64,000 nucleotides of DNA from NCBI RefSeq assembly GCF_032191835.1, contig NC_083230.1, positions 95,852,001 through 95,916,000 of the forward strand, written 5' to 3'. This document shows, piece by piece, positions 1,830 through 64,000 of the stretch (the stretch's first letter is position 1; each line of letters starts with the position of its first letter). The translations under genes were made by a program, and so were the position numbers. The notes under the pieces are model-generated. The model made no database searches. It saw only the letters and a program-made list of their open reading frames with translations, and had not been told where the DNA came from. The stretch is from Heteronotia binoei. Taxonomy: Eukaryota.

Positions 1830-2005
1830 GGAACATACAACAAAGTTAGAGTCCAGAGGCACCTTTAAAACCAATAAAGTTTTATTCAAGGTACAAGCTT
1901 TCGTGTGCATATACAAAAAAGCATATACCTTGAATAAAACTTTGTCTTAAAGATGCCACTAGACTCAGATTTTGTTCATCTGCTTCAGACCAACATGGCT
2001 ACCCG
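1830..2005. mobile_element. Foldback mini-element of two inverted PLE 3' termini
   Basis: Arms cacctttaa..aaagttttattcaaggta / taccttgaataaaactttgtcttaaagatgcc; the centre holds half a hammerhead (aagctttcgtgtgca). Confidence 0.75.
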
Positions 2006-3861
2006 CCAAATATAATCAGGAAAGTGTTACTGGAGGTATCCCAATACCAGTGTTGACTCAGTGTGCAGTAGCAGTGAAAAAAAGCAAATGTCATATTGAG
2101 ATTATTAGGAAGAGTTCTGAAAATAAAACCACCAGTACTGTAATGCTTCTATACAAATCTATGCCATGACTGTATTTCCATCCTTCTGTGCAGTTCTAGT
2201 CACCCCATCTCAAAAGGATACAGAGAAATAGGAAAATGGCAAACAAAGTAATCAAGACCTTAAAGCACATTCTGCATAAGGAAAGTCTCAAGTGACTGAA
2301 TCTTTTCAGCTCAGAAAAAAATACAACCAAGGGCAAGATAAAAGTTTATAACATTATGTAGGGATGGGAAAAACAAAAATAGAGAGAAATTTCTCACTCT
2401 CGTAACAGTCAAACTCAAACCATGACCTTCATGTCATCTCTTGATCTAGCTAGATAAGGCTCTTGGTGTGACCCACCAAGGTCTCTTCTTCTGAGCCACT
2501 CTCACCCTATGGGAGAAAAGTAAACACTTGCATTGACTCTCTGCAGAACATGACCCTACCACTTAAAGGATTAATTTCTGACCAGCAATGGTTTATGTTA
2601 AATAATTACTGCTGAAAGGAATAATTGCTTTTTGCTTTCCAGGCTGTTTGGGAAAAGAATATTCTGGGGTATTGTAATTACTTTTGCCTAGTCCACAGTA
2701 GGAGCCATTGACCTGAATGCCTTTTTCAAAGGGGATATGGCATGGTCACTTAATTCAGCAGGATGGCCACTACTTTTCTTGGCATATGGGCAAAGTGCAG
2801 AGAAAAATTTCTCAGCTGAAATGTAGAGAAGAGGGAGTATTCAGCAGTGGATGGGGTATTAAATTCAGACTGGGAACAGCCATGTCAAACTCCTACTCAT
2901 CTATAAAGCCTACCAAACACTTCATTGGTGGTTCAGCCTACCTCATACAGCTAATTAAAAGCATAAAATGGGATTGCTTCATTTTATTTATTTTCATTTA
3001 GTTTATCATAGACCGACTTTTAATAAAGAAGTCTCCAGAGTAGGTTTACAGCACACACACAAAATTCCATTAAAATTCTTTTTTCCCGTAGAGTTATTCC
3101 TCCATCACATCATTTTTTAAAAAACTGATTTTAAACACAAATATTATTCTGTATTTTTTTTTAGGAATAGCAGAATGTAAAAGTAACAGATAAAGTGATA
3201 CACTTCACAGGAATAAAACAGTGAGCTCAGTGCAAAGTCTGTCTATCATATATTTAAAGTATATGCTGAGTGCATACGTCTGTCTACTGCTTGAGGTGTC
3301 TCCCAACTGCCTTTCTTTTCTCCACTAACATAGTAATAGCCACTAGCACAGATGGCCTAAAAAGATGCATGAAGGACAGATCCATCAGTGGCTACTAGCC
3401 ACTGTGACTATAGGGAACTTCCACAATAAAAGTGCAAAACCTCTGAACACCAGTGCTAGGTGACTGCATCAGACAGAGGAAGACCTCAGCCACTGTGCCA
3501 AGTTTATTAACCCTCCAGGGCAACTGGTTGGCAACTGTGTGAAACAGGACGTTGGGTAAGATGGACTACAAGTCTGAGCCAGCAGGGCTCTTATCTGCAG
3601 CAAGCGCCTATGTATTTGTGTGCACAGGCTCCACTGCATAATCAAGACTGGGCAGTGCCTCTGTTAATTCAAACAAAGCTATGTAGAAAGGGTTCGTTAT
3701 AGACATTCAGCAGACTGCATTAACATTATGGGTAGGGGGTTCAATCCTGCTCCCCCCTGCATTTAATCAGTATAAGTGGATGTTTAGAGGTGTGAACTGG
3801 CGGAGACTGACCAAGAGAGAGATTTTGGGGTCATGGCAGATAACTCACTGAAAATGTTGAG

Positions 3862-10578: not shown

Positions 10579-11335
10579 AAATGGCATCCACTTTGTTATT
10601 AATTTCCCTAATCTAATTTGGCATGATCCCAATTGACTAGGTGGATGGGTGCTGGTACCCTAAACCAATCATGTTATACTGGGCTGTCATCAGAGCACCA
10701 ACATTATTGTTACTGCTGTGGTGTCTGGATAGGTGCTATGACTGCCACCTATTGGACCAACAACTACATCCCTGAGGCTGTTTTTAGTTTTATTTTTATT
10801 ACATTATTTGTAATAAAAGGCAGATTACACAAGTGTGAATCAATACAATCAACAGGATAGAATGCCCAATAAGCAGCATAATAGGATTAGGATTGCTAAA
10901 ATCATTAAAAATGCTCAAGTATTAAAATGGCATGGGAAATAATACAGAAATTACATAGCAGGATAATACACACAGAGCAACAGATGGAAATACACATCAA
11001 TACTATACACAGTTCCTTTACCTTCCTTACAACATGTTTCTAGCCCTAGAACAAAGTTTAAATCCAGTGGCGCCTTTAAGACCAATGAAGATTTATTCTG
11101 GGTCTAGCCCTTGTGTAAGAATGCCCTCATGAATAATTCAGGTTTGCATAGTTTGTAGAAAGCCAGCAGAGTGGGAACTTTCCTGACCTTCTCAGGCAGA
11201 CCATTTCATAAGATGAGGACCACAACAAAGAATGGGCATGTACAGGCAATTTTTTTATCTTACCCATTTTCAGTGTGGCACCTGTAGAAGAAAGAAACTG
11301 TTGTGGTGGAGTATAATGAGAGAGATGGTCTCGTA

Positions 11336-19200: not shown

Positions 19201-20059
19201 GGTTGCTGGAAATCTCCTGGGATCACAACTGATCTCTAGGCAACAGAGATCAGTTCACCTGGAGAAAATGGCCACTTTAGAAGGTGGACTCTGTGGCATT
19301 ATACCCCATCGAAGTCCCTCCCCAACCCCTCCCTCCTCAGGCTCCACCCCCAAAATCTCCAGGTATTTCCCCACCCTAGGGATGGACCTTGTCCATAAGG
19401 ATCAAGAAACAGCTCAGTACGCATAGTAAAATGAAACTCAGGATATCAAGGCCAGGAAGCATACAATTCCACCTTATTTTCAGTCTGGTGTGCACATGCT
19501 GTGGAACTATTCCAAAATCATTTGATTTACAAGCCCAGTATTTTATACAAAGTTTTACGAAGACTGAACCTCAAAACGTATGATAAATTGATACTTTGGG
19601 GAATAACTAATTATGAACGATAACATTGGACTATTTTATTCTGGCATCTTAGTTATGACTCAGTGAAGTCAGAAAGGGCCCCCCTTCCAGTTCCCTAACA
19701 TAAATTCATTGTTCCTTCCTTCCCATTTAGCCTGGGCCATGAGGGGCTGCCACTAGAATCAGGATATTGGATGTAAATGAATCTTTGGTCTCAGTAGACA
19801 GGGTTGAAGTCATGCGTAAGATCTAACCAATCCAAGGATTGAATGCTTGACAAGAGCAGTGATCCAAATTTAAGGGGGGGGGAGCACACGGGAAAGATGG
19901 CCACCTAGCAGTCATGCTGAGCTATTGCATTTAAAACCCCAAACACAAAGTCATGGAATGCCTTTTGTTAGGACTCAGTAGGCAGCCGTGTTGGTCTGAA
20001 GCAATAGAACAAAACAGTAGACAAGTGCACCTTTAAGACTAACTAAGTTTTATTCAGAA

Positions 20060-20099
20060 TGTAAGCTTTCGTATGCTCTTAAGCAGACTTCATCAGACA
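20060..20099 (-). ncRNA. Minimal hammerhead ribozyme motif, second pseudo-LTR copy
   Basis: Reverse complement of the 22981-23020 motif. Confidence 0.75.
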
Positions 20100-22980
20100 A
20101 ATGGGAATGGAAGCAGCAATTCTTAACATAAGTGGGCAGTGTGGAATCATGGGAATGTTTTTACAAGATTAAAAGAATCACAAATAGGGATCTGTGTTTG
20201 TTAGTGTTAGGACAAAACAGGGCTGAAAAAACACTAGAGGGTGATAAAAAGCAGACTGCTGTCGTAGGGGTGCCATAAATCTAGGTAACATTCTGGCTTT
20301 GTTAGTTTAAATCAAGAGCATGGTTACTCAAGAGATTATAACATCTATATGGTTTGCCATAGGATGGATTGGGAACATTGGCTCTCCAGATTGGGGTAGG
20401 GAACATTGGCTCTCCAGATGTTTTTTGCCTACAACTCCCATCAGCCCCAGCTAGCATGGCCAATGGCTGGGACTGATGGGAGTTGTAGGCAAAAAACATC
20501 TGGAGAGCCAACATTCCCTACCCCTGGTATATGCAATAAGACAAACAGCCAATATCCCCCATTTGAGTATGTCAATACAAAAAACCAAAATATTTTGATA
20601 CACTGTTCTAAAAGAGAAATAATATAAGCTCTTAGAAAAACAGGGTGCATTAAAGTATAGTGGAAGGTGGGTTAGTATATGTAATGAGACAAACAGCCCA
20701 CATCCCTCATTTGAGCATGTCAACACAAAAAAACATTATTCTGATACTGTTCTAAAAGAGAAATACATTGGAACACTGTGGATGCACAGGTATACTCAGT
20801 GAGAGTTGGTTTAGTATATGTAATAAGATAAAAAAAAACAATATCCCTTTTCAGTTCTGGGGAGGTGTTTGTTCCAAGTTTCATGATAATTTGTAATTCA
20901 GCAATTTCTCTTTCCATTCTGTTCTTGAAGTTCCTTTGCAGTAAAACAGCTACTTTGAGGTCACCCATTGAATGCTCAGGAAGGTCAAAGTGTTCTCCAA
21001 CAGGTTTCTCAGTTCTGTAATTGCTGATGTCAGATTTGTGTCTCTTTATCCTTTGGCGTAGGGTTTGTCCTGTTTGCCCTATGTAGAGAACTGAGAGGCA
21101 TTGTTGGCATTTAATGGCATATATAATGTTGGAAGATGAACAAGTGAATGAGCCTGAGATGGTATAGTTAATGCTGTTAGGCCCAGTGACTGTGTTGTCT
21201 GGATTTATGTGGCAGCAAAGTTGGCACTTGGGTTTATTGCAAGCTCTGGTCCCGGTGTTCCTGCTCAGATGCGATGTTGTATTGTTGTGAGTGAGGAGTT
21301 GTTTGAGATTGGGGGGCTGTCTGTGTGCAAGGAAAGGTTTACCCCCCAGTACTTTTGAAAGACAGCTGTCACTGTCCAATAGAGATTGTAAGTTGTTGAT
21401 GATACGTTGAACTGTTTTCAGTTGAGAGTTGTGTGTGACCACTAGTGGTGCTTTGTTATTGTCTCTTCAGGGTTTGTAACAGGTTTTCTCTGGGTATCAT
21501 TCTGACTTTGTTAATCTGTTTCTTGACTTCATCAGATGGGTACTTTAGTTCCAAAAAGGTTTGTTGTAGATCCCTCAGGTGAGAATCTCTGTCAGTAGAA
21601 TTGGAGCAAATGCGGCTGTAGCGTAGAGCCTGGCTGTATACAATGGATCATTTGGGATGGTAGCTGAAGGCACGCAGGGATGTTTGTCGGTCAGTAGGTT
21701 TCCTGTATAAGGTAGTGCCTATGCGTCCCTCATGTATTTTTACAGTGGTGTCCAGAAAATGTATTTCTTGTGTGGACTGGTTCATTGTCAGGTTGATGGT
21801 AGGATGAAAGTCATTGAATGCTTGGTGGAATGCATCCAGGGCTTCTTTACCATGTGTCCAGACCATAACGATGTCATCACTATAATGCAGGTATAAGGTA
21901 GGTATGAGTGGGTGGGAGTCTAGGAAGCGTTGCTCCAAGTCAGCCATAAAGATGTTTGCATATTGTGGGGCCATGCGGGTGCCCATAGCTGTACCATTGA
22001 TCTGTAGGAAAAGTTCATTGCTAAACCTGAAGTCGTTATGGGTGAGAACAAAATGGCACAGTTTTGTGGCAAAGTCAGCTGTGTTTTTATCAGAGATTAT
22101 ATTATTTACAGCTTGTAATCCATCTTGGTGTGGGATGTTGGTATATAAAGATTCCACATTCATGGTAGCTAAGAAGGTTGTTCAAAGGTTGTATTTTTCT
22201 CAGAAAATCTGTAGTGTCACAAACATAACTAGGGGCACTGGTGGCATAGGGTCTTAGAACAGAGTCCATATATTCAGATACCCACTCAATGATAGTGCCT
22301 ATCCCCAACACAATGGGACATCCCGGGTTGCCTGGTTTGTGTATTTTGGGTAGAAGATAAAAATTACCTGGTCGAGGTTCCTATGATGTGTCTGACAGGA
22401 TCTGTTCCGGAATGCTCAGTGGTAATTCTTTTGTAATCTTGTTCAGTTCTTTTTTATATCCTGTGTGGGGTCCGAGTTCAGTGGTTTGTAAAATGAAGTA
22501 TTTGAGAGTTGCCTTTGAGCCTCCTTGATGTAGTCTAATGTGTTCATGATGACAACAGCTCTTCCTTTGTCTGCCTCTTTGACTGTAATATCCATATTGT
22601 TCCTGAGACTGTCTATGGCCTTCCTTTCAGCAAGGTTGAGATTTTGCTGTGTACGGTGTTATTTGTTGATCACATCTTATTTGTCTTATTTTGTCTTATT
22701 GCATATACCAGCCCATCCTATGGCAAACTAAATGGATGCTATAATCTCTTGAGTAACCATGTCCTCTATTTAAACTAACAAAGCCAGAATGTTACCTAGA
22801 TTTATGGCACCCCTACGACAGCAGTCTGCTTTTTATCACCCTCTAATGTTTTTTCAGCCCTGTTTTGTCCTAACACTAACAAACACAGATCCCTATTTGT
22901 GATTCTTTTAATCTTGTGGAATCATGGGAATGTTTTTACACTGCCCACTTATATTAAGAATTGCTGCTTCCATTCCCATT

Positions 22981-23020
22981 TGTCTGATGAAGTCTGCTTA
23001 AGAGCATACGAAAGCTTACA
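22981..23020 (+). ncRNA. Minimal type I hammerhead ribozyme motif in PLE pseudo-LTR
   Basis: UGU-CUGAUGA-AG-ucugcu uaag agcaua-C-GAAA-GC-UU-ACA. Helix I UGU/ACA; palindromic AGCU replaces helix III. Confidence 0.75.
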
Positions 23021-23236
23021 TTCTGAATAAAACTTAGTTGGTCTTAAAGATGCACTTGACTACTGCTTTGTTCTTTTGTTAGGACTAATCAAACAACTGA
23101 GCTAACTTTTGAGTCCTCAAGAATTCTTCAAAAGCAGGATGCCAAAGAAAAGGAAGGGAAGATGTTTCCAGTCTTACAGAGATCTGAAGAACTCAAAAAG
23201 CTTGCAAATTGCTTTGTGTTACTTTGGTTGATCCTA

Positions 23237-23452
23237 GGTGATGGTGGAAAGTGTTGTCAAGTCCCAGAGGACTTACAGGAACCCTATATGGTTTTATAAG
23301 GCAAGAGATGTTCAGAGGTTGTTTGCCATTACCTCCTTCCGCATCACCACCCTAGACTTCCTTGGTGGTCTCCCATCCAAATACAGACCAGGGCCAACCC
23401 TGCTTAGTTTTTGAAATCTCACAAGACTGGGCTAGCTTGGACAATCCAGAGC
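23237..23452 (-). mobile_element. 5S-derived SINE copy
   Basis: Same head and tail as 1588-1806. Confidence 0.75.
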
Positions 23453-24478: not shown

Positions 24479-24615
24479 GCAGGGGTGGTCAACGGCAGCT
24501 CTCCAGATGTTTTTTTGCCTACAACTCCCATCAGCCCCAGTCATTGGCCATGCTGGCTGGGGCTGATGGGAGTTGTAGGCAAAAAAACATCTGGGGAGCT
24601 ACCGTTGGCCACCCC
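24479..24615. mobile_element. Palindromic hAT MITE family 4 nested in a Squam3-like SINE
   Basis: 8-bp TSD gatatagg. Sibling at about 20392-20526 inside the PLE terminus. Confidence 0.85.
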
Positions 24616-27681: not shown

Positions 27682-28876
27682 TATAAAATTAAAAGGCATA
27701 CTCAAAAGGAAGTGCACTGTGAAGAGCTAAACTACTCCAAGGCTCTTGAATGCTGTCTAAGAGCCAAAGAGCCCCTCTAAAGACCTTCAGGGCCTGGTTC
27801 AGGGGGGTTTCCACTGGCAAGGTGCTCCATAATATCCATTCGCTATATCAGTGACATCAGCTCAGCAACAAGTATTGTTTTAATGAAATGTATAGCCTGT
27901 TGGTTTCCCCAATTAACATATTAATTAAAACAAATAAAAATGACTGGGGCATAATCCACCAGAAAGCTCTGTGTAGGTCCGTCTTACTGAATGGAAGCTA
28001 TACCAGAACACTGCAGCAGTCTGTTTACTAGAAAAATAACATCTCCAGGTCTGTTTTTACCTGCATGTTTTGTTCTGGTTTGGGGAGCACCCATCTTCTG
28101 TTTGTCCTATTTTGATGTTTTGCCCCTTTTTGCTGTGTTCCTTCCCAAGTTTGCTTTGGAACAATCTTTTTGGAAAGACTGCTATCAAAGTGCCCTTGGA
28201 CACCATGCACCTGGGAAGGTGTGCATTTTTTGCAGGTCCTACCTGCATCAATACCATTTTCCTTAGCTCAGTCTCTGTGACCACTATTCCCTCCCCCCCC
28301 CAAACAAAAGAAGACTTTTTTTGGGGGGGGGGAGGTAATAGCTGGATCACTATAGTACTATAGTGTTAAAACACCCTGCTGCAACTGGTTTACAGCTTTC
28401 TTTTTTAAAGTAAGTCTCTAACCTTTTTCTCTGCAAAGTTAAAAGGGGGAAGGTACTAGCTGCACACTTCTGTTTATAACTCTACAACCAAAAGGGCTAG
28501 AGACTGAACTTCTGAAAAAAAAAATGAAATCTGGGAGCTCCTGTATTGTTGCAGCAGATCATTGTAATGCTGCATCTATCTAGCTGTTACTGATTTCGTT
28601 TTTTAAAAAACAGAAAAAATCCTCAGAGGAAAAAATGGTAGACATGGGAACTGAGACAAGGAAAATTGTGTGGATGCTCCGTTGTGACTGAAAATGTCTC
28701 TGCAGCAACAGCAGCAACAAAACCTACACAGCAATCACATACATGCAGAAAGCCCAAGTTTGTGAGTGGTTCATAGAATAATCATGAGCCTTACATAATG
28801 ACTGGCTTGTGGATGCTATATTGATATGTATTCTGTGCCCAGAGAATTGATCTGTCTTTATGTGTGTTGTGCCTAG

Positions 28877-29023: not shown

Positions 29024-29802
29024 GTTGGAAGATATTCTGCATGGAGCAGGAGGCTGCTTTTCTTTTGGCCTTCTGCAATTTTTTGTTTGTTCACTCAGCC
29101 AAATTTCAGAAATGTGTGTTTGCTGAACTGCCTTTAGGGGCATAGATCATTCTATCCTATTGTGTGTATGTGAGAGTGTATATGTTTAATATGTTATGAA
29201 TAATACAATATTCTTCTCTGCTGTTTTTTGAGTTGGTGAGCCAAATTAAAATATTTAAAACCATAGCACCTAACAGTATAGACGAGCACCAGCATACAAA
29301 AGGATTAAACCACAACAAAATTTTAATACATTTCCAGTCAGCTGTGCAATAATTTAAAATGACATTAAAATGGTGCTCAAATATGTCTCACATAACACAG
29401 CAAAGATAAAATTGCTGAATCTTGATCTAAGTAAATTGATTAAGAAGTCTAGGGGGAAAAAACATAAGAGGACTGGGTAAAATGCGCATTTTAATTTGTT
29501 TATGGCAGGTTTAGTGTACAATATTAACCTTTGTATTTATGGCCAGTTAACAGTAGCCCCTCCCCCCCAGATACACATTTTTATCTCCAGGAAGTTTGCA
29601 AACTAATGGTATTAAGGGCTTTTTTTTAAAAAAGGCCAAAATAAATTGAAGAAGAAGACAACTGCAGATTTATACGCTGCCCTCCTCTCTGAATCAGAGA
29701 CTCAGAGCGGTTTACAATCTCCTATATGTTCTCCCCCCACAACAGACACCCTGTGAGGCTGAGAGGGCTCTCACAGCAGCTGACCTTTCAAGGACAACTC
29801 CT

Positions 29803-29914
29803 TGAACAATACCTGATCCCCTCGTCTGATGAAGTGTGCTTAGAGAGCACACGAAAGCTTACGTTCTAAATAAAACTTGGTTGGTCTTAAAGGTGAAACT
29901 TGACTCCTGCTTTG
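29803..29914 (+). mobile_element. 112-bp hammerhead-bearing PLE-terminus mini-element nested in a SINE
   Basis: CGU-CUGAUGA-AG-UGUGCU uagag AGCACA-C-GAAA-GC-UU-ACG, then an AATAAA-like signal and the PLE terminus. Flanked by the 16-bp direct repeat ttcaaggacaactcct (29787-29802, 29915-29930). Confidence 0.85.
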
Positions 29915-31849
29915 TTCAAGGACAACTCCTGCCATAGCTATAGCTAACCCAAGGCCATTTCAGCAGCTGTAAGTGGAGGAGTGGGGAATCAAACCCGTTT
30001 CTCCCAGATAAGAGTCTGCACACTTAACCACTACACCAAATTGCCCTACCTAACACTTAACCACTACACCTAACTTACAGAGAGAAATATTAACAAGTGA
30101 TTGAGGAGTGTATCTTAGTCTGTTCTCCCACCTCCCTTTAGAAACAAAGACAAGCCAATACAACTGAAAAATAAAAAAAATGTTCAAAATATGCAAATAG
30201 TTTTCCAGGACATAAATACTAACCCTCCTGTCATTTTTCATCCCATAAACTGAGGAACCCAATTCCCTCTTACCACTTCCCTTTACAACAGGCAGAACAT
30301 TAAGCAACATTTGAAAAACAAGATCACATTAACATCCTGCTTACCTAATCCCCAAATTCATTTCATTAATTCACTGCATTTTGATAGACTGCCTTCCAGT
30401 CAGTATACTCAAGGACAGAACTTAATGTGACACTTGGTACTGTGATTATTTTCTTGGAGGTTTTATTTTTTACTGGATGACAGCTACAAGGTTTGCTGTT
30501 TAAAGGGGAAGGCTGCCTGGTGCAACTCTCTCCCCCCCCCCCCTTGGTTTTCTTGCCAAATATCACTGTCCTCAAGTTACTATGACACACTTCTGGGTGA
30601 TGTCATCGTGTCAGCGATGTAGTGGGAGGTTCCGGACCGGGAGCTTGGCAGCTCTATATGCAAAGGAGTTTCTGCTGCAAAAAAAAGCTCTGGACAGGAT
30701 AAAAAAAGCATAGAGATGAAAAAGCAAATGCTGGGATGGAAGGAGAGTCAAATTAGGGTTACCAACAACCTGGAGAAAGAATGTCCTGTTCCTTTAACAG
30801 AGGCTTAATATACCGGGTGATGTTATTTACTTCTATGCCATAGGAAGCCCATTTCCACACATTAGGCCTCTGTTAAAGGGACAGGACATTTTTCTCCAAA
30901 CCTGTTGAAACTCCTGAGGCAAATGATTTCTGGTCCCAGCAGAGAAGGCCTTGCTCTCTGTTTCTGATGTTGATGTAGAATAGTTGCTGACAGGATCTAC
31001 TCTGGGAAGGGAGGAACCAAACAGGAGCCAGTTCCCAGGGTCTCTCCTCTTCCTCTGTACGAGGGCTTTCTACTTACAGCCACTCGCTAAGTGTTGGAGA
31101 GGGAAGAAGAAGATATTGGATTTATACCCCACCCTGAGACTCAGAGAGGCTTACAATCTCCTTTACCTTCCCCCACAACAGGCACCCTGTGAGGTAGGTG
31201 GGGCTGAGAGAACTCTCACAGAAGCTGCCCTTTCAAGGGCACCTCTGTGAGAGCTACGGGTGACCCAAGGCCATTCCAGCAACTGCAAGTGGAGGAGTGG
31301 GGAATCAAACTCAGCCCTGAGCCCCAGGAGTGGGGAATCAAACCCAGCCCTGAGCCACCTGGTGAGAAGGGCGGCATACAAATTACAAATAAACTAAACT
31401 AAACTAAAAACTTCTCCCAGATAAGAGTCTGAGCACTTAACCACTACACCAAACTGACTACAAAGTAAGCCGCCCTGATATTGTAAGCCGCCCTGAGCCC
31501 GCTTTGATGGGGTAGGGCGGGATGTAAATCAAATAAATAATAAAGCAACATGCGCTGTGTGAGTCATAGGTAAACTTGCCAGTGACCTGCAGAAAAATTG
31601 TCCTGCTCTTTTAATTTAATGTATGGAAGTCAACTGGTGAAGCTTTTTATGCATGCAAAATATGTGCTGTACCACAAAGACAGGTCCCCCTGCTGTGAAG
31701 CAGGTCACCCTGTACCTTCTTTTATTGATTGTTTGCACAGAAAATCAGTTCTGAATGATTACTGTACTACTACCATAGTGCAATACGCCAGCAATGGGGT
31801 AGATGTTGTATAAGTTCATCCTTTGTGCAGCCAGATCCAGGTGAGTACT

Positions 31850-31965
31850 TGTATTGGTCTGAAGCAACAAAATAAAGTTTGAGTCCAGTAGCACCTTTAT
31901 GACCAACAAAATTTTATTCAAGGTATGAGCTTCTTGTGCATGCACACTTCTTCAGATACAGTGAA
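31850..31965 (-). mobile_element. PLE-terminus mini-element with degenerate hammerhead
   Basis: On the - strand: GUAU-CUGAAGA-AG-UGUGCAUGCACA-aGAA-GCUC-AUAC, then ttgaataaaa...aaaggtgctactggactc...gcttcagaccaa. Confidence 0.75.
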
Positions 31966-32350
31966 TTGGAAGAAAACAATTCAGACCTACAGACAGAGGT
32001 TGAACATCAAATTAGCATATAACATAACGATATTTTGAGACGAAACAAAAATAACAAGTGTATGGGTCAACAGCTGCATGGGTTTAATTAAGGGGGAATA
32101 ACTGTTGAAGCAATAAATAGGTCAAAATAGGAGATAAATGTGTAAGAGAATCCTTTCTAATTGTTGGAAGTTAACTGAGACTCCTTTGTTCAGCCAGTAT
32201 GTAAATGTGTCTTTGAAGGGAATAAGAAACCCCAGATTGGCCTGCAAATGCTTTCCAGGGATGATTGTCACAAAAGGTAATTGTGCATTAGTCAGGTCTG
32301 GAGTATTGTTCAGACTACATTTCTACTTTTCTTCCTGGCTTGCTTTTTAG

Positions 32351-44715: not shown

Positions 44716-46886
44716 GCTTGGGATTTCTTTCCTAAGGATAGCATCTAGCTCCTGAATGCTTGCACTGGTATACTGGCCTGCAATACTGAATTAACATCCT
44801 TGTGACACCTGCATAACATGATGATTTGTGACATCATACTAACAAAACACAACAATGAATAAATGGCATCTAAGCATTTATTTGTTTTTGCACCAAAGCT
44901 CAGAAAGGAATGGATATGTGCTTTTCAGGCTGCTTACCAGCAACCTCCAGAGTAAGGAGAGTGACTTCCCCTTCTAACCATTGTGAGTCTAGTCCTGATC
45001 AACAGGCTGATAACAAGCGTGATGAGAATCTTAAGTCAGGTGCGCCTTATTACCCTTAGAGCATTACTCTTGGTCCCAACAGCTTTAACATTGGTGAAAG
45101 TGACCAGATGGCTGTTGGAGGGGAGAACGACTTACACTGTAATACGTTTCTGGCAGGAAGGGCGGGATTTGAAAATATGATAGCCAATTTCATCTCTATA
45201 GAAAATTTTCAAGTGAGTTAAGCATATTTGTGGACTTAAGCAAAGTTAATTCATAGGTGGGGAGGGGAAGGAATGAAAAGACAATCCCTAAAGCGTGCCA
45301 GCATTAATGAAGAGGACAGGATGGAACCTTGTGACAGATCCAGTCATTGCAACATGAAGGTTTGAGAATGGCACGGCACATGCTTTACACTGAGAATTGC
45401 TCCTTGGAATCTCCAGTTGAAAGGTTCTCTGTAGTGTGATTTCAGAATTCCAAAGATACGCACAGGCTCAATAAGGCTGGGGTTCCCTGCTCTAAGCCAT
45501 TAGCTGTACACAGCCTCAGCGGATGGTTTCACCACCCTCAGCAGCATGCTGAATAGTCCTTGAGAAACACTGCCAATCAGAGCAGACAGTGGGGCTGGAT
45601 GGACCAGTGAATTGGATCATAAGGCCATTGGAGGGGGTGCACAGCTCAGTGGTACTCACTGCACTGTGTCTAGAATCTATGTTCAATTCCCAGCATCTCC
45701 AGTTAAAAGGACCAGGTAGAAGGTGATGTGCAAAACCTCTACCTGAGACCCTGGAGAACTGCCAATCTGAGTAGACAGCACTGAAGCGGATGGACAGCTA
45801 TTGGGGAACGGGTTAAAAGAATGTCTGCCTGAGACGTGGAAGAGACGATACAGTCACAGGAGGGAGTATTGGAACACCACCAGCCATCAAAATACCAGCT
45901 AAGGAGCACAGAGAAAAATCCTATGCAATACACACTTTTAAAAAAATGGCCTAAAGCAGATATTCTTGTGATATTACCCACCACCACCCAGGTACTCTAG
46001 CACAGTGTTCCCTCTAAGCTAGCTCACAGTCTTTAGCCTCCAGCTTACACATTTCTGTTTTAGCTCAGGAAGGATGACCCCTAATTTATGCAGTAGTTCA
46101 CAGCTTTAATGCCAGTAGCTCATAAAGTAGAATTTTTGCTCACAAGACTCTGCAGCTCAGAGGGAACATTGCTTTAGGAGATGCACCAACTACAATGCAG
46201 TGGCTGCTGCACTACCTACAGATGACCCCTGGGTTAGGTGTTCCAATCATTTGAACTTCACTTTCATAAGACACATGCCTAGAGATACAATCCCGTTCCA
46301 CTTTGGGGGCTGGGTTTGACTTTTCTGATGTACACCATGAGAACTCAGCAATTGGGTTTGACTTCAAGTAGTGCAGGATGCAAGAAAATGTCAGCCCTGC
46401 AAACCATGATGGTTTACAGGACCACCTTCTCTGGTTTCTCTAAGTCAGGGGTCCCCCATGTGATACAAGCATGGGACCAGTCCTTGGAATCTCCAACGGA
46501 AAGCTTCTCTTTAGTCGGACAGGAGACATCCTTGAGAACTACTGCCAATCAGCCAACGCATCACCTGACACTCACTGAGTGTTTTCAGAAAGTGGGTAGG
46601 GCCAAGTGAACACACACAAAGCTGCCTTATACTGAATTAGACTCTTGGCTCTATCAAGGTCAGTATTATCAACTCAGACCAGCAGCAGCTCTCCAGGGTT
46701 TCAGGCAAAGTTCTTTCACATCATCTCCTGCCTGATCCTTTTAACTGGAGATGCTGGGGCTTCAATCCGGGACCTTCTGCATGCCAAGCAGAGATTCCAC
46801 CACTGAGCCACAGCCCCTGCAAAGGGAATCTTTTGCTCATCACAGCACCTGATAGTCCAGTGGAGTTTCTACTGGCGCTGCAGATT

Positions 46887-57371: not shown

Positions 57372-59775
57372 AGATAAGATAAGATAAATTTATTTTTTAT
57401 ATCCCGCCCTCCCCTGCCAAAGGCGGGCTCAGGGCGGCTCACGGACATGGAAGACCATGATATGCATGAAATACAATATAAATGAACAATTTTAAAATTA
57501 CAATTCAGTTAAAATACAGTTACTTGATTAATTAATTAAATAGATAAAACAGGTGCTATAAAGTGCTACAGATCACAATCATGGACAAGATGGCTGGATG
57601 GGTACAGATCCGTTTAGCCAGGTTCTGTCTCAAAAGCAAGTTGAAACAGAGAGGTTTTGCAAGCCCTGCGGAACTGATTCAGGTCCCGCAGGGCTCGCAC
57701 CATCTCTGGAAGTTGATTCCACCATCGGGGGGCCATTGCTGAAAAGGCTTGCTCTCTAGTTGTCTTCAGTCTAGCCTCTTTTGGCCCAGGGATTTTTAAA
57801 AGGTTTTGAGAGCTAGATCTCAGTGCTCTCTGGGGAACATATGGGGAGAGGCGGTCCCTAAGGTAGGCAGGTCCTCGGCCATGTAGGGCTTTAAAGGTGA
57901 TAACCAGCACCTTATAGCGAACACGGTACACAACCGGCAGCCAGTGCAGATCCCGCAGCCCAGGCCGCACGTGTTCCCACCGAGGTAGTCCCATCAGCAG
58001 CCTGGCTGCCGCGTTCTGCACTACCTGGAGTTTCCGTGTTCGGTATAAGGGCAGCCCCATGTAGAGGGCATTGCAGTAGTCTAATCTCGAGGTGACCGTT
58101 GCGTGGATCACAGTTGCTAGGTCGCTGCGTTCCAAGAAGGGAGCCAACTGCCTCGCCCTCTTAAGGTGAAAGAAGGCGGCTCTAGCAGTGGCAGCTATCT
58201 GGGCCTCCATTGATAAAGAGGACTCTAGTAGCACTCCCAGGCTCTTGACCATGCGCCCTGGTATCAGTGGCGCACCATCAAAAACCGGTAGGGTGACCTC
58301 CCCTCCCAGTCCGCCGCGGCCCACACAAAGGACCTCAGTCTTCGCCGAGTTCAACTTCAGCCCACTCAGCCTGAGCCAGTCAGCCACGGCTTGCAACGCC
58401 CGGTCCAGGTTTATAGGGACATCACCAGTCCGGTCATCCATCAATAGATAGAGCTGGGTATCATCAGCGTACTGATGACAACCAAGCCCGTACCTCCGTG
58501 CAATCTGGGCAAGGGGGCGCATAAAGATGTTGAACAACATCGGGGAGAGAACTGCCCCCTGAGGCACCCCACAATGAAGTGGGTGTCTCTGAGAGAGCTC
58601 CCCCACAATTGCCACCCTCTGTCCCCGACCTTCAAGGAAGGAGGAGAGCCACTGTAAGGCTAGCCCCCGAATTCCTGCGTCGGCGAGGCAGCGAGACAGC
58701 AGCTGATGATCGACCACATCGAACGCAGCCGATAGGTCTAACAGCAGCAGTACTGCCGAGCCGCCTCGGTCCAGTTGTCGCCGGAGGTCATCCATGAGGG
58801 CGACCAAGACTGTTTCTGTCCCATGGCCCGGGCGAAAGCCGAACTGGCATGGGTCTAGGACGGAAGCGTCCTCCAAAAACTCCTGTAACTGCAACGCCAC
58901 ACAGCCCTCTCGATAATTTTGCCCAAAAAGGGCAAATTTGAGACCGGTCGATAGTGTGCCAATTCGGCCAGGTCTGATGTAACTTTTTTCAAGAGAGGGC
59001 GGACCACTGCCTCTTTCAGGGATGTTGGAAAAACACCCTCTGAAAGGGAACGATTTATGATGTCCCGTATAGGACATCTTAGTTCCTCCTGGCAGGCTTT
59101 AATTAGCCAGGAGGGACATGGGTCCAGATCGCAAGTTGTGGATCGTGCAGTGCCAAGAATTCTGTCGACTTCCTCCAAGCTGAGCGGGTCGAAGCAATCC
59201 AGAGTTCAATCAGAAGACACGCATTGGGCCTCGAGTTCACTTACTGCATCTAAATTGGCAGGGCAGTCGTGGCGGAGCGATTGGACCTTATCTGCAAAGA
59301 ATTTCGCAAAAGCCTCACAGCCTATCTCCAATTCCTTAACTTTTGAATTGCCCTGTGGCAATGTTGTAAGATTCCGAATTATTCTAAATAATTGAGCCAG
59401 GCGCGAATTTGCAGATGCAATCTTAGCTGCAAAGAATGTTTTCTTTGCGGTCTTGACTGCCATCTCATAGGACTTCATAAACTTCCTATAAGATGTTCTA
59501 GTCGCTTCGTCGCGGGTACGCCGCCATTGCCTCTCTAGCCGTCTGAGACCTTGTTTCAGCTGGCGTAATTCCGGGGTATACCACGGGGCCAGCCTAGTCC
59601 GAGGTCGCAGAGGGCGTCGAGGTGCGATCTCCTCGATGGCCCTAGAGAGCCGGCTATTCCAAGTCTCAACTAGGCCATCGAGAGAGTCGCCAGAGGGCCA
59701 GGGATCCCGCAGGGCCATCTGGAACCGTTCCGGATCCATTTGGCTCCGTGACTGAGACCTGGATCCGGGAGGGGT
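57372..59775 (-). mobile_element. 5'-truncated L2-clade LINE, relatively young, two frameshifts
   Basis: ORF2 pieces in three frames. RT motifs QFGFRPGHGTET, LLDLSAAFDVVDH, GVPQGAVLSP, QYADDTQLY, SRLDYCN, LHWLP. 3' tail gtgagccgccctgagcccgcc...gggcgggatataaaaaataaa(ttatc)n. CpGs largely retained. Confidence 0.93.
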
Positions 59776-62999: not shown

Positions 63000-63165
63000 G
63001 CAGAACAAACTCTGAGTCCAGAAGCACCTTTAAGACCAACAAAGTTTTAGTCATGGTGTAAGCTTCCATGTGCACCTTGAATAAAACTTTGTTGATCTTA
63101 AAGGCACCACTGGAGTCAACCTTTATCCTGCTGCTTCATACAAGCACAGCTATCCCACCTGATTC
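63000..63165. mobile_element. Second foldback mini-element of PLE termini
   Basis: gagtccagaagcacctttaagaccaacaaagtttta ... ttgaataaaactttgttgatcttaaaggcaccactggagtc; same design as 1830-2005. Confidence 0.72.
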
Positions 63166-63861
63166 TATATTTAGCTGTGGCACGGTTTTTCATACCTGCA
63201 CAACTGAAAAGAGCTTTACACAGCACATGCAAAGTCAGTAGGAAGGCTGCCTCGGCGCATGGTTAGAGATTGTGCTACAATCATTCAGCAACCCTCTTTA
63301 ACTGTGTGCTTAACACAGCCATTGCACCAGCAACAATGAGATCCCGTTTCTCTCAATGGTGCGCAACACCCCCCACCCTTCAAAAAGAGGAGACCTCAAA
63401 GGCATATTTCTGCATATCAAACAACTGTAAAAAGTATTATGTCACACCGTCTCTTCTTGTTACACGTATTTTTGAAAACATGCAATAAAATGTTAATTGC
63501 AAAAAAAAACTACCAACAAAAATTACATCGATTTTTTTAATGGTCAGTTGTGGCCACCGTCCTCTTGCCCTTCCCGCCTTGTGCTTCTTCTCCAACTCAT
63601 TTTGTTTATATTGTATGTTACATGTTAAAAAGGAATATGGCGGACAAGAAGATCACTAGGAAATACATGTCCTTTTGTTTTGCCTAGACTTGTAGCAAGA
63701 GCAATTAACAGGCAACTTGTATAACCTTTTATTGGTTCGCACACAAATGGTATCCAGACCAAATGATCTTTCAATTTTTTTATTACACTATTTTGCCATT
63801 GGATCCTAACTTTGTATTCTTAGCCACTGCCTACCAGCTATATGTAGCTCTGCTCACTGTA

Positions 63862-64000
63862 CCCCATCCCCTCGTCTGTAGAAGTATGCATGCATACGAA
63901 AGCTCACGTTCTCAATAAAACGTTGTTAGTCTTAAAGGTGCTACTGGACTCCTACTTTGTTCTTTTGCTTCAGACCAACACGGCTGCCCACCTGGATCCA
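63862..64000 (+). mobile_element. PLE-terminus mini-element with hammerhead-like motif
   Basis: CGU-CUGUAGA-AG-UAUGCAUGCAUA-C-GAAA-GCUC-ACG, then aataaaa...gtcttaaaggtgctactggactcc...cagaccaacacggctgcc. Confidence 0.78.

What the first reader, a model, noticed from the sequence alone, without database searches (positions are those of the whole stretch)
22981..23020. Minimal hammerhead ribozymes with covarying helix I across a dispersed PLE-terminus family
Seen: CUGANGA-A-G-[helix II]-C-GAAA-GC-UH at 22981-23020(+), 20060-20099(-), 29823-29863(+), 31923-31959(-) and 63873-63908(+). Helix I changes in compensatory fashion: UGU/ACA, CGU/ACG, GUAU/AUAC, CGU/ACG. Helix II varies but stays paired or palindromic (UGUGCU/AGCACA, UGUGCA/UGCACA, UAUGCA/UGCAUA). 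Helix III is replaced by the palindrome AGCU. Established: PLE pLTRs carry minimal type I hammerheads thought to cleave as dimers. Inferred: at least two subfamilies (CUGAUGA/CUU and CUGAAGA/CUC) were under selection for self-cleavage while active, forming a ribozyme-bearing autonomous/non-autonomous system that may be uncatalogued in this lineage. This is my best candidate system in the window.
Basis: partly seen in the sequence, partly recalled or inferred. Interest (0 to 1): 0.8.

Follow-up and report, generated by a model that had tools for sequence, protein, structure and literature searches.

The report
Penelope-like retrotransposon ends with minimal hammerheads
The motifs are the known minimal hammerhead ribozyme motifs at the ends of decayed Penelope-like retrotransposon copies in a lizard genome, so this is real but ordinary repeat biology already described for reptiles.

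Summary
The five motifs exist at the stated coordinates. Only three keep an intact hammerhead core: A 22981-23020(+), B 20060-20099(-) and C 29823-29863(+). A and B are identical and come from one insertion. D has lost C11.1 and one A of GAAA. E reads CUGUAGA, not CUGANGA.

The element identity is proven. A decayed, 5'-truncated reverse transcriptase plus GIY-YIG endonuclease reading frame lies at 22673-20831(-), and B sits about 0.7 kb downstream of it. A is an inverted 5'-truncated partner. The whole head-to-head composite is flanked by a 14-bp target-site duplication. C is a 112-nt solo insertion with a 16-bp duplication. Copy ends are of two kinds, short or about 35 nt longer, which is the published "tail" signature of these elements.

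Homologous motifs downstream of related endonucleases in three turtle genomes covary in helices I and II: 6 of 11 pairs show double changes and 90.7% of cells are paired. RNA reads show no pile-up of ends at the predicted cut sites.

All of this matches Cervera & De la Peña 2014, Craig 2021 and Frangieh 2024. The small copies are truncated insertion products, not a separate non-autonomous system. The scan holds 61 first-reader notes of the same kind elsewhere in this genome. This is a new member of a known kind, of low interest.

The parts
19962..19975 (.). Left copy of the 14-bp target-site duplication CTTTTGTTAGGACT of the A/B composite insertion.
   Evidence: identical 14-mer at 23073-23086.
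19976..20059 (-). Module downstream of hammerhead B: conserved block (UGAAUAAAACUU..GGUCUUAAAGGUGC) plus the long tail ending ..CAGACCAACACGGCUGCCUACUG.
   Evidence: The block holds most of the columns that are invariant across all nine window copies.
20060..20099 (-). Hammerhead motif B. Core intact, C.U mismatch in helix II. Predicted cut between 20063 and 20062.
   Evidence: Identical to A.
20100..20830 (-). Non-coding pseudo-LTR stretch between the end of the endonuclease match and hammerhead B. It is interrupted by an unrelated hairpin repeat at about 20409-20508.
   Evidence: loose ends at 20409 and 20508.
20831..22673 (-). Decayed, 5'-truncated reading frame of the element: RT, a CX4CxxC linker (about 21209-21241) and a GIY-YIG endonuclease. 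It is spread over three frames with stops and corresponds to residues about 252-877 of an 881-aa relative.
   Evidence: RVT_1 1e-8, GIY-YIG 1e-5; translations; 5462 relatives; tblastn.
22713..23072 (+). Inverted, 5'-truncated partner arm A: last ~268 nt of the pseudo-LTR, the hammerhead and the block, with a short end and no tail. It is 93% identical to 20367-20002.
22981..23020 (+). Hammerhead motif A (the finding's coordinates). Predicted cut between 23017 and 23018.
   Evidence: The fold is weak (-5.5 kcal/mol, z +0.9).
23073..23086 (.). Right copy of the 14-bp target-site duplication.
29803..29914 (+). Solo 112-nt 5'-truncated insertion C with a short end, nested in another repeat. It is flanked by the 16-bp direct repeat TTCAAGGACAACTCCT (29787-29802 and 29915-29930).
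29823..29863 (+). Hammerhead motif C, the only copy that passes the strict descriptor. The minimum-energy fold gives helix I (3 bp) and helix II (8 bp).
   Evidence: (-13.2 kcal/mol, z -2.0).
31834..31995 (-). Copy D of the short-palindrome subfamily. The hammerhead remnant at 31923-31959 has a broken 3' box. The copy runs past the long tail (..CACCUGGAUC).
63845..64000 (+). Copy E of the short-palindrome subfamily. The hammerhead remnant at 63873-63908 has CUGUAGA. The copy runs past the long tail and is cut by the window end.
1832..2007 (.). Head-to-head pair of 5'-truncated copies: 1832-1910(-) with a short end and 1903-2007(+) with a long tail. Both break inside helix II and neither has a 5' box.
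63001..63165 (.). Head-to-head pair of 5'-truncated copies: 63001-63074(-) with a short end and 63074-63165(+) with a long tail.

Best explanation
These are the terminal modules of an old family of endonuclease-bearing Penelope-like retrotransposons (PLEs) in a lizard genome. The CX4CxxC linker places the family in the Neptune/Nematis type.

The module consists of four parts in order:
- the pseudo-LTR;
- a minimal type-I hammerhead, made of CUGANGA, one unpaired A, a 7-8 bp helix II closed by G10.1-C11.1, GAAA, the palindrome AGCU in place of helix III, U or C at position 17, and a 3-4 bp helix I;
- a highly conserved ~60-nt block (AAUAAAA..GGUCUUAAAGGUGC);
- an optional ~35-nt AC-rich tail.

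In a source element arranged in tandem, this module lies between one copy's endonuclease end and the next copy's reading frame.

Inferred from the published Anolis work: the element's protein binds its RNA near this module and cuts both DNA strands. It then starts reverse transcription at either of two internal sites. This would give short-ended or tailed copies, frequent 5' truncation, and head-to-head inverted pairs flanked by one target-site duplication.

Shown here: the anatomy, the target-site duplications, the two kinds of end, the inverted pairs and the covariation of both helices.

Inferred: while the source elements were active, the hammerhead helped process multimeric transcripts. 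Lacking helix III, it would need a second copy (dimer through AGCU) or the element's protein to reach the active fold.

The copies in this window are dead. Their reading frame is broken and two of the four independent motifs have core mutations.
For: Element identity:
- RVT_1 and GIY-YIG domains lie next to copy B.
- A three-frame reading gives RT, C-NKPK-C-QL-C and GIY-YIG.
- tblastn to full-length relatives covers residues about 252-877.
- There are 5462 relatives. The nearest are Zootoca vivipara (70-71%) and turtles (58-60%).

Insertion anatomy:
- A 14-bp duplication flanks the A/B composite and a 16-bp one flanks C.
- Three head-to-head pairs exist.
- In all three pairs the tail is present at one end only. 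This is as described in PMC8557442 and explained by two reverse-transcription start sites in PMC11167929.

Hammerhead:
- Only C fits the strict descriptor, against 0 hits in 300 shuffles.
- The fold of C reproduces helices I and II.
- The homologous motif lies ~450-700 nt downstream of the endonuclease in Caretta, Chrysemys and Pelodiscus.
- On 13 sequences, 90.7% of cells are paired against 18-45% when the partners are slid. Six of 11 pairs change on both sides, reached by 9 of 500 shuffles. The covariation score is 0.436 against 0.225, reached by 0 of 500 shuffles.
- Core position 7, the only free core position, varies U/C/A/G across copies and in read consensus.
- A full-length 881-aa relative has the same build upstream of its ATG.
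- All traits match the published features of metazoan PLE minimal hammerheads.
Against: - No Rfam hammerhead model matches, even at E up to 10 on 91 nt. This is expected for a motif without helix III.
- No excess of RNA read starts or ends lies at 20062/20063 or 23017/23018 (table 6).
- Most laid reads are 88-95% alike and equally frequent in both directions. They come from other copies of the family and give no strand information.
- The core is not always canonical in relatives. Chrysemys copies carry CCGAAGA (U4 changed to C), and Caretta and Chrysemys copies carry CCAAUGA or UCAAUGA.
- In Anolis the hammerhead was dispensable for insertion in vitro.
- The covariation sample is small (11 distinct rows), and the rows are related.
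Confidence: 0.9

Rival explanations
1. The conserved module is chiefly a protein-binding and reverse-transcription-start signal of the element RNA. On this reading the hammerhead-like shape is kept as structure (helix II hairpin plus short helix I), not for catalysis, and cleavage plays no part in the life cycle.
For: - The most conserved columns lie downstream of the motif, not in its core.
- No RNA ends lie at the cut site here or in Anolis.
- In Anolis, catalytic mutants did not change insertion in vitro, and cleavage needed the protein.
- Turtle copies carry a U4-to-C box in apparently young, identical copies.
- Craig et al. raise the possibility that hammerheads simply parasitize PLEs.
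Against: - Both core boxes, the G10.1-C11.1 pair, the AGCU palindrome and H17 (never G) are kept across lizard, three turtles and a distant full-length relative. Meanwhile the helices change by compensation and the free core position N7 varies. This pattern is hard to explain without the ribozyme rules.
- In Anolis, C3 and G8 mutants abolish cleavage and the double mutant restores it.
Confidence: 0.2
2. The short copies form a distinct non-autonomous, ribozyme-bearing element (a retrozyme-like family) moved in trans by the autonomous elements.
For: - Animal non-LTR retrozymes are reported to derive from the pseudo-LTRs of these elements, and were found in four of five reptiles sampled.
- C is a neat 112-nt unit with a target-site duplication.
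Against: - There is no direct tandem array of the unit in 64 kb.
- The short copies start at different points: 20 nt upstream of the motif, inside helix II, or after the cut site.
- They share their 3' ends with the coding copy.
- Three of them sit in head-to-head pairs typical of insertion by these elements.
- This fits random 5' truncation.
Confidence: 0.08
3. The match to the hammerhead rules is a chance resemblance inside an ordinary repeat.
For: - The loose pattern CTGANGA..GAAA alone is not rare: 12 hits against 5.5 expected.
- Rfam hammerhead models are silent.
Against: - The strict descriptor gives 0 hits in 300 shuffles.
- Both helices covary.
- The motif holds the same position relative to the endonuclease in four reptile species.
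- The build is identical to the published one.
Confidence: 0.02

Closest known systems
Minimal hammerheads in the pseudo-LTRs of metazoan Penelope-like elements (Cervera & De la Peña 2014, PMC4209133)
   Same: - Core boxes, an unpaired nucleotide between A9 and G10.1, and the G10.1-C11.1 pair.
- A long helix II (7-8 bp) and a short helix I (3-4 bp).
- No helix III loop, with a palindromic 15.2/16.2.
- Consensus families with compensatory changes.
- Most copies are solo or in opposite strands 100-700 bp apart.
- Reported in reptiles (turtle, snakes).
   Different: - This particular lizard family was not individually shown in the text read.
- Helix I is at the short extreme (3 bp) in most window copies.
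Poseidon_Ac (PAc) of Anolis carolinensis (Frangieh et al. 2024, PMC11167929)
   Same: - A lizard element with RT plus GIY-YIG and a minimal hammerhead at the junction of pseudo-LTR and reading frame.
- Two internal reverse-transcription start sites ~34 nt apart, giving tailed and untailed copies.
- Cleavage and extension of both DNA strands.
- No RNA-seq ends at the cut site.
   Different: - A different clade: PAc lacks the CX2-5CxxC linker that the window element has.
- A different motif sequence (CUGAGGA-U-G..GAAA-CG-UC).
- In PAc the reading frame starts inside the motif. In the full-length relative of the window family, the ATG lies ~85 nt downstream of the cut site.
Neptune/Nematis-type endonuclease-bearing Penelope-like elements (Arkhipova 2006; Craig et al. 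2021, PMC8557442)
   Same: - A CX2-5CxxC motif between RT and GIY-YIG.
- Pseudo-LTRs and an inverted 5'-truncated upstream copy.
- A 30-40 bp tail at one end only.
- A canonical hammerhead motif is present.
   Different: No phylogeny was run, so the clade is assigned from the linker motif only.
Animal non-LTR retrozymes (Cervera & de la Peña 2020; Li et al. 2026 preprint)
   Same: A type-I hammerhead derived from the pseudo-LTRs of these elements.
   Different: There are no tandem arrays in this window, and no circular RNA evidence was sought or found.

Membership tests
Minimal hammerhead of Penelope-like elements (Cervera & De la Peña 2014) | Conserved boxes CUGANGA and GAAA | tested here: met
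   Met in A, B and C. D (A-GAA) and E (CUGUAGA) are mutated remnants.
Minimal hammerhead of Penelope-like elements (Cervera & De la Peña 2014) | [quoted passage not shown] | tested here: met
   A-G...C is present in A, B, C and E. Helix II is 94.6% paired over 11 distinct sequences.
Minimal hammerhead of Penelope-like elements (Cervera & De la Peña 2014) | No helix III hairpin; palindromic 15.1-16.1 (AGCU) followed by H17 | tested here: met
   AGCU is invariant in all 13 aligned copies. Position 17 is U or C.
Minimal hammerhead of Penelope-like elements (Cervera & De la Peña 2014) | Short helix I with compensatory changes among copies | tested here: met
   Three of 4 helix I pairs change on both sides; 84.1% of cells are paired.
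Minimal hammerhead of Penelope-like elements (Cervera & De la Peña 2014) | Lies in the pseudo-LTR of an element encoding RT and GIY-YIG | tested here: met
   B lies ~0.7 kb downstream of the endonuclease remnant. The same arrangement holds in three turtles.
Minimal hammerhead of Penelope-like elements (Cervera & De la Peña 2014) | Self-cleavage after position 17 | tested here: inconclusive
   No pile-up of read ends lies at the predicted sites in three raw RNA runs. The libraries are ordinary cDNA at depth 20-80, so this is no proof of absence.
Canonical type-I hammerhead (Rfam Hammerhead_1 and relatives) | Match to the covariance model, including a helix III hairpin | tested here: not met
   There is no hammerhead hit at gathering score, at E up to 10 on 12 kb, or on 91 nt around C.
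Endonuclease-bearing Penelope-like element, Neptune/Nematis type | RT followed by a C-terminal GIY-YIG endonuclease | tested here: met
Endonuclease-bearing Penelope-like element, Neptune/Nematis type | CX2-5CxxC motif upstream of GIY-YIG | tested here: met
   C-NKPK-C-QL-C is read in frame 2 at about 21209-21241. The criterion comes from PMC8557442. No tree was built.
Endonuclease-bearing Penelope-like element, Neptune/Nematis type | Inverted 5'-truncated partner, 30-40 bp tail at one end only, target-site duplication | tested here: met
Non-LTR retrozyme | Head-to-tail tandem repeats of a hammerhead-bearing unit | tested here: not met
   All copies are solo or inverted; there is no direct tandem in the window.

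The most novel reading that the evidence does not exclude
In this reptile lineage of Penelope-like elements, the hammerhead core may be drifting out of catalytic use. Young, identical Chrysemys copies carry CCGAAGA (U4 changed to C), yet helices I and II, the AGCU palindrome and the downstream block stay conserved from turtles to lizards. Either a U4C core is tolerated when the element's protein assists folding, or the module now serves mainly as an RNA-protein recognition and reverse-transcription start signal.
Probability: 0.2. Interest if true: 0.4.

Novelty: new member of a known kind. Interest (0 to 1): 0.15.

Why it matters
It matters little beyond annotation. The case shows that a reader without tools can recognise these ribozyme motifs. 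It also gives a clean textbook example of the insertion anatomy of a Penelope-like element: a head-to-head pair, a one-sided tail and a target-site duplication. The homology of the whole module between lizards and turtles, and the non-canonical box in turtle copies, could feed the open question of whether these hammerheads cleave in vivo at all.

Tried and rejected
- **Rfam scans.** Runs at gathering score and at E up to 10 gave no hammerhead hit. This was rejected as evidence against the motif, because the models require helix III.
- **Loose pattern CTGANGA..GAAA.** It is not significant alone: 12 hits against 5.5 expected.
- **Exact look-ups of the nearest Zootoca proteins P0001, P0002 and P0011.** None is on record.
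- **Zootoca locus L001.** Its pseudo-LTR is interrupted and holds no hammerhead of this family.
- **Metagenome scan for more reptile copies.** It found none, only chance matches and other families from unknown eukaryotes.
- **Downstream of copy D.** A search for remnants of the element's reading frame found none.
- **Target-site duplications.** None could be found for the pairs at 1.9 kb and 63 kb or for D.
- **RNA reads.** They could not show strand or cleavage.
- **Not attempted.** The species was not identified (run names are coded) and no clade tree was built.

Full report
**Observation**

- A (22981-23020+) and B (20060-20099-) are identical: UGU-CUGAUGA-A-G-UCUGCU-UAAG-AGCAUA-C-GAAA-GC-UU-ACA. 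Both boxes are intact, but helix II has a C.U mismatch.
- C (29823-29863+) is canonical throughout.
- D (31923-31959-) has lost C11.1 and one A of the GAAA box.
- E (63873-63908+) reads CUGUAGA, so the essential A6 is changed. This is why the plain pattern search did not return it.

A strict minimal-hammerhead descriptor finds only C in the window and nothing in 300 dinucleotide-preserving shuffles. The loose pattern alone is not significant.

They form two head-to-head pairs, at 1832-1910(-)/1903-2007(+) and 63001-63074(-)/63074-63165(+).

**What it is**

- Between B and A, on the minus strand, lies a decayed reading frame. It has a reverse-transcriptase domain (21648-22163, RVT_1 1e-8) and a GIY-YIG endonuclease (20720-21442, 1e-5).
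- Read in three frames, it runs from about 22673 to 20831. It matches residues about 252-877 of an 881-aa full-length relative. The element is therefore 5'-truncated and broken by stops and frameshifts.
- Upstream of the GIY-YIG core it has C-NKPK-C-QL-C. This fits the CX2-5CxxC linker that marks the Neptune and Nematis clades and is absent from Penelope/Poseidon.
- A search of 1.84 billion representative proteins gave 5462 relatives. The nearest are from the lizard Zootoca vivipara (70-71%) and from turtles (58-60%).
- Hairpin repeats scoring on the Anolis-derived mir-5408 model fit a squamate genome. An earlier first-reader note calls the genome a lizard.

**Insertion anatomy**

- Arm A (22713-23072+) is 93% identical to 20367-20002. 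It is an inverted, 5'-truncated copy of the end of the pseudo-LTR, the hammerhead and the downstream block. It abuts the truncated 5' end of the coding copy.
- The whole composite is flanked by the 14-bp direct repeat CTTTTGTTAGGACT (19962-19975 and 23073-23086). A and B therefore arose in one insertion event and count as one observation.
- C is a 112-nt solo insertion flanked by a 16-bp direct repeat.
- Copy ends are of two kinds. The short kind ends ..CUUUGUU (A, C and the minus members of both small pairs). The long kind is about 35 nt longer and ends in the AC-rich ..CAGACCAACACGGCUGCC.. (B, D, E and the plus members).
- In each head-to-head pair the tail is present at one end only.
- Craig et al. 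describe exactly this for these elements: an inverted 5'-truncated copy and a 30-40 bp tail at one end.
- Frangieh et al. explain it for the Anolis element PAc. Its protein cleaves and extends both DNA strands, and it starts reverse transcription at two internal sites about 34 nt apart.

**Is the hammerhead real?**

- Homologous motifs lie 450-700 nt downstream of related endonucleases in Caretta (L002), Chrysemys (L003) and Pelodiscus (L122). They are followed by the same conserved block (AAUAAA..GUUAGUCUCUAAGGUGC).
- I aligned 13 sequences (11 distinct) and counted pairs for helices I and II:
  - 90.7% of cells are paired, against 18-45% when the partners are slid.
  - Six of 11 pairs change on both sides. 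Only 9 of 500 shuffles reach this.
  - The covariation score is 0.436 against 0.225 for shuffles. None of 500 shuffles reaches it.
- Helix I alone takes the forms UGU/ACA, CGU/ACG, GUAU/AUAC, GCAU/AUGC, UGAU/AUCA and UCAU/AUGA.
- The only free core position, N7, is U, C, A or G across copies.
- The loose-end consensus of RNA reads from other family copies reads CCUCGUCUGA(C/U/A)GAAGUGUGC. The reads also show both subfamilies with intact boxes, so E's CUGUAGA is a private mutation.
- The minimum-energy fold of C gives helix I plus helix II (-13.2 kcal/mol, z -2.0). A and D fold poorly.
- A full-length 881-aa relative (L123) has the same build about 85 nt upstream of its start codon: ACAC-CUGACGA-A-G-AGCU-AGG-AGCU-C-GAAA-GC-UU-GUGU. 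AAUAAAA follows directly, and an AC-rich stretch lies just before the ATG.
- This explains why D and E run on past the tail (..CACCUGGAUC). The read loose ends show other family copies doing the same.
- Every one of these traits is on the list that Cervera and De la Peña gave for metazoan minimal hammerheads of these elements. They also reported such motifs in reptiles.

**What is not shown**

- Rfam hammerhead models do not match. This is expected without helix III.
- Three raw RNA runs of the same species label lay reads over the whole stretch. Most reads are 88-95% alike and equally frequent in both directions, so they come from other copies of the family and give no strand information.
- No place with many read starts or ends lies at 20062/20063 or 23017/23018. 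Frangieh et al. saw the same in Anolis. They also found that cleavage in vitro needed the element's protein and was dispensable for insertion.
- In turtles the 5' box is not always canonical. Three identical Chrysemys copies have CCGAAGA, and other copies have CCAAUGA or UCAAUGA.
- So the fold has been under selection, but cleavage in vivo remains unproven.

- Two subfamilies are supported.
- A separate non-autonomous system is not. The short copies begin at different points, share their 3' ends with the coding copy and sit in head-to-head pairs. This is what 5' truncation during insertion produces.
- There are no direct tandem arrays of the retrozyme kind in the window.
- The scan itself holds 61 first-reader notes on hammerhead-bearing Penelope-type inserts elsewhere in this genome. 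The family is therefore abundant.

**Verdict**

This is a real feature, correctly recognised in kind and overstated in detail. It is a typical member of a family described in 2014 and dissected biochemically in a lizard in 2024. The copies in this window are dead. Interest is low.

Noticed in passing
window 22918-22937 versus 20143-20162: A 20-bp segment (GGAATCATGGGAATGTTTTT) is exactly inverted between the two arms of the A/B composite, while the flanks stay collinear. It is either a small inversion after insertion or a template switch.
   Followed up: partly
window 20417-20500, 24507-24590 and 28280-28346: These are perfect-hairpin repeats of the miniature inverted-repeat type. The first two score 60-68 bits on Rfam mir-5408, below its gathering score of 90. 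One sits inside the element's pseudo-LTR, and read loose ends at 20409 and 20508 show it is a separate repeat.
   Followed up: partly
L003 589-638(+), 537-586(-) and 47292-47341(+) (Chrysemys picta): Three identical turtle copies of the homologous motif carry CCGAAGA (U4 changed to C) instead of CUGANGA. Helices I and II are perfect. This suggests a non-canonical or inactive core in a young turtle subfamily.
   Followed up: partly
L123 133-171 and 257-2902: A full-length 881-aa relative on a 2.9-kb ENA metagenome contig has an intact reading frame. A minimal hammerhead lies ~85 nt upstream of the ATG. The organism is unknown.
   Followed up: partly
metagenome loci L005, L007, L017-L025 and others (contigs Ga0210040_*): One metagenome holds more than 35 contigs carrying two other minimal-hammerhead families of the same A-G / AGCU build, for example UUGAC-CUGAAGA-A-G-AACAG..CUGUU-U-GAAA-GC-UU-GUCA. 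They presumably come from Penelope-like elements of a eukaryote in that sample.
   Followed up: no
window 57614-59077(-): A 487-aa open reading frame has a reverse-transcriptase domain (RVT_1 3.8e-31). It is only 24% identical to a Penelope-like RT, so it is probably a LINE.
   Followed up: no
window 46746-46817(-): A tRNA-like sequence scores just above the Rfam threshold (31.8 bits). It is probably the head of a SINE.
   Followed up: no
window 23339-23448(-): A weak 5S-rRNA-like match (26 bits, E 0.078, below threshold) lies just right of the composite insertion.
   Followed up: no
window 11048-11097(-): This is a further remnant of the conserved downstream block (AGAATAAATCTTCATTGGTCTTAAAGGCGCCACTGG), without a hammerhead.
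   Followed up: no
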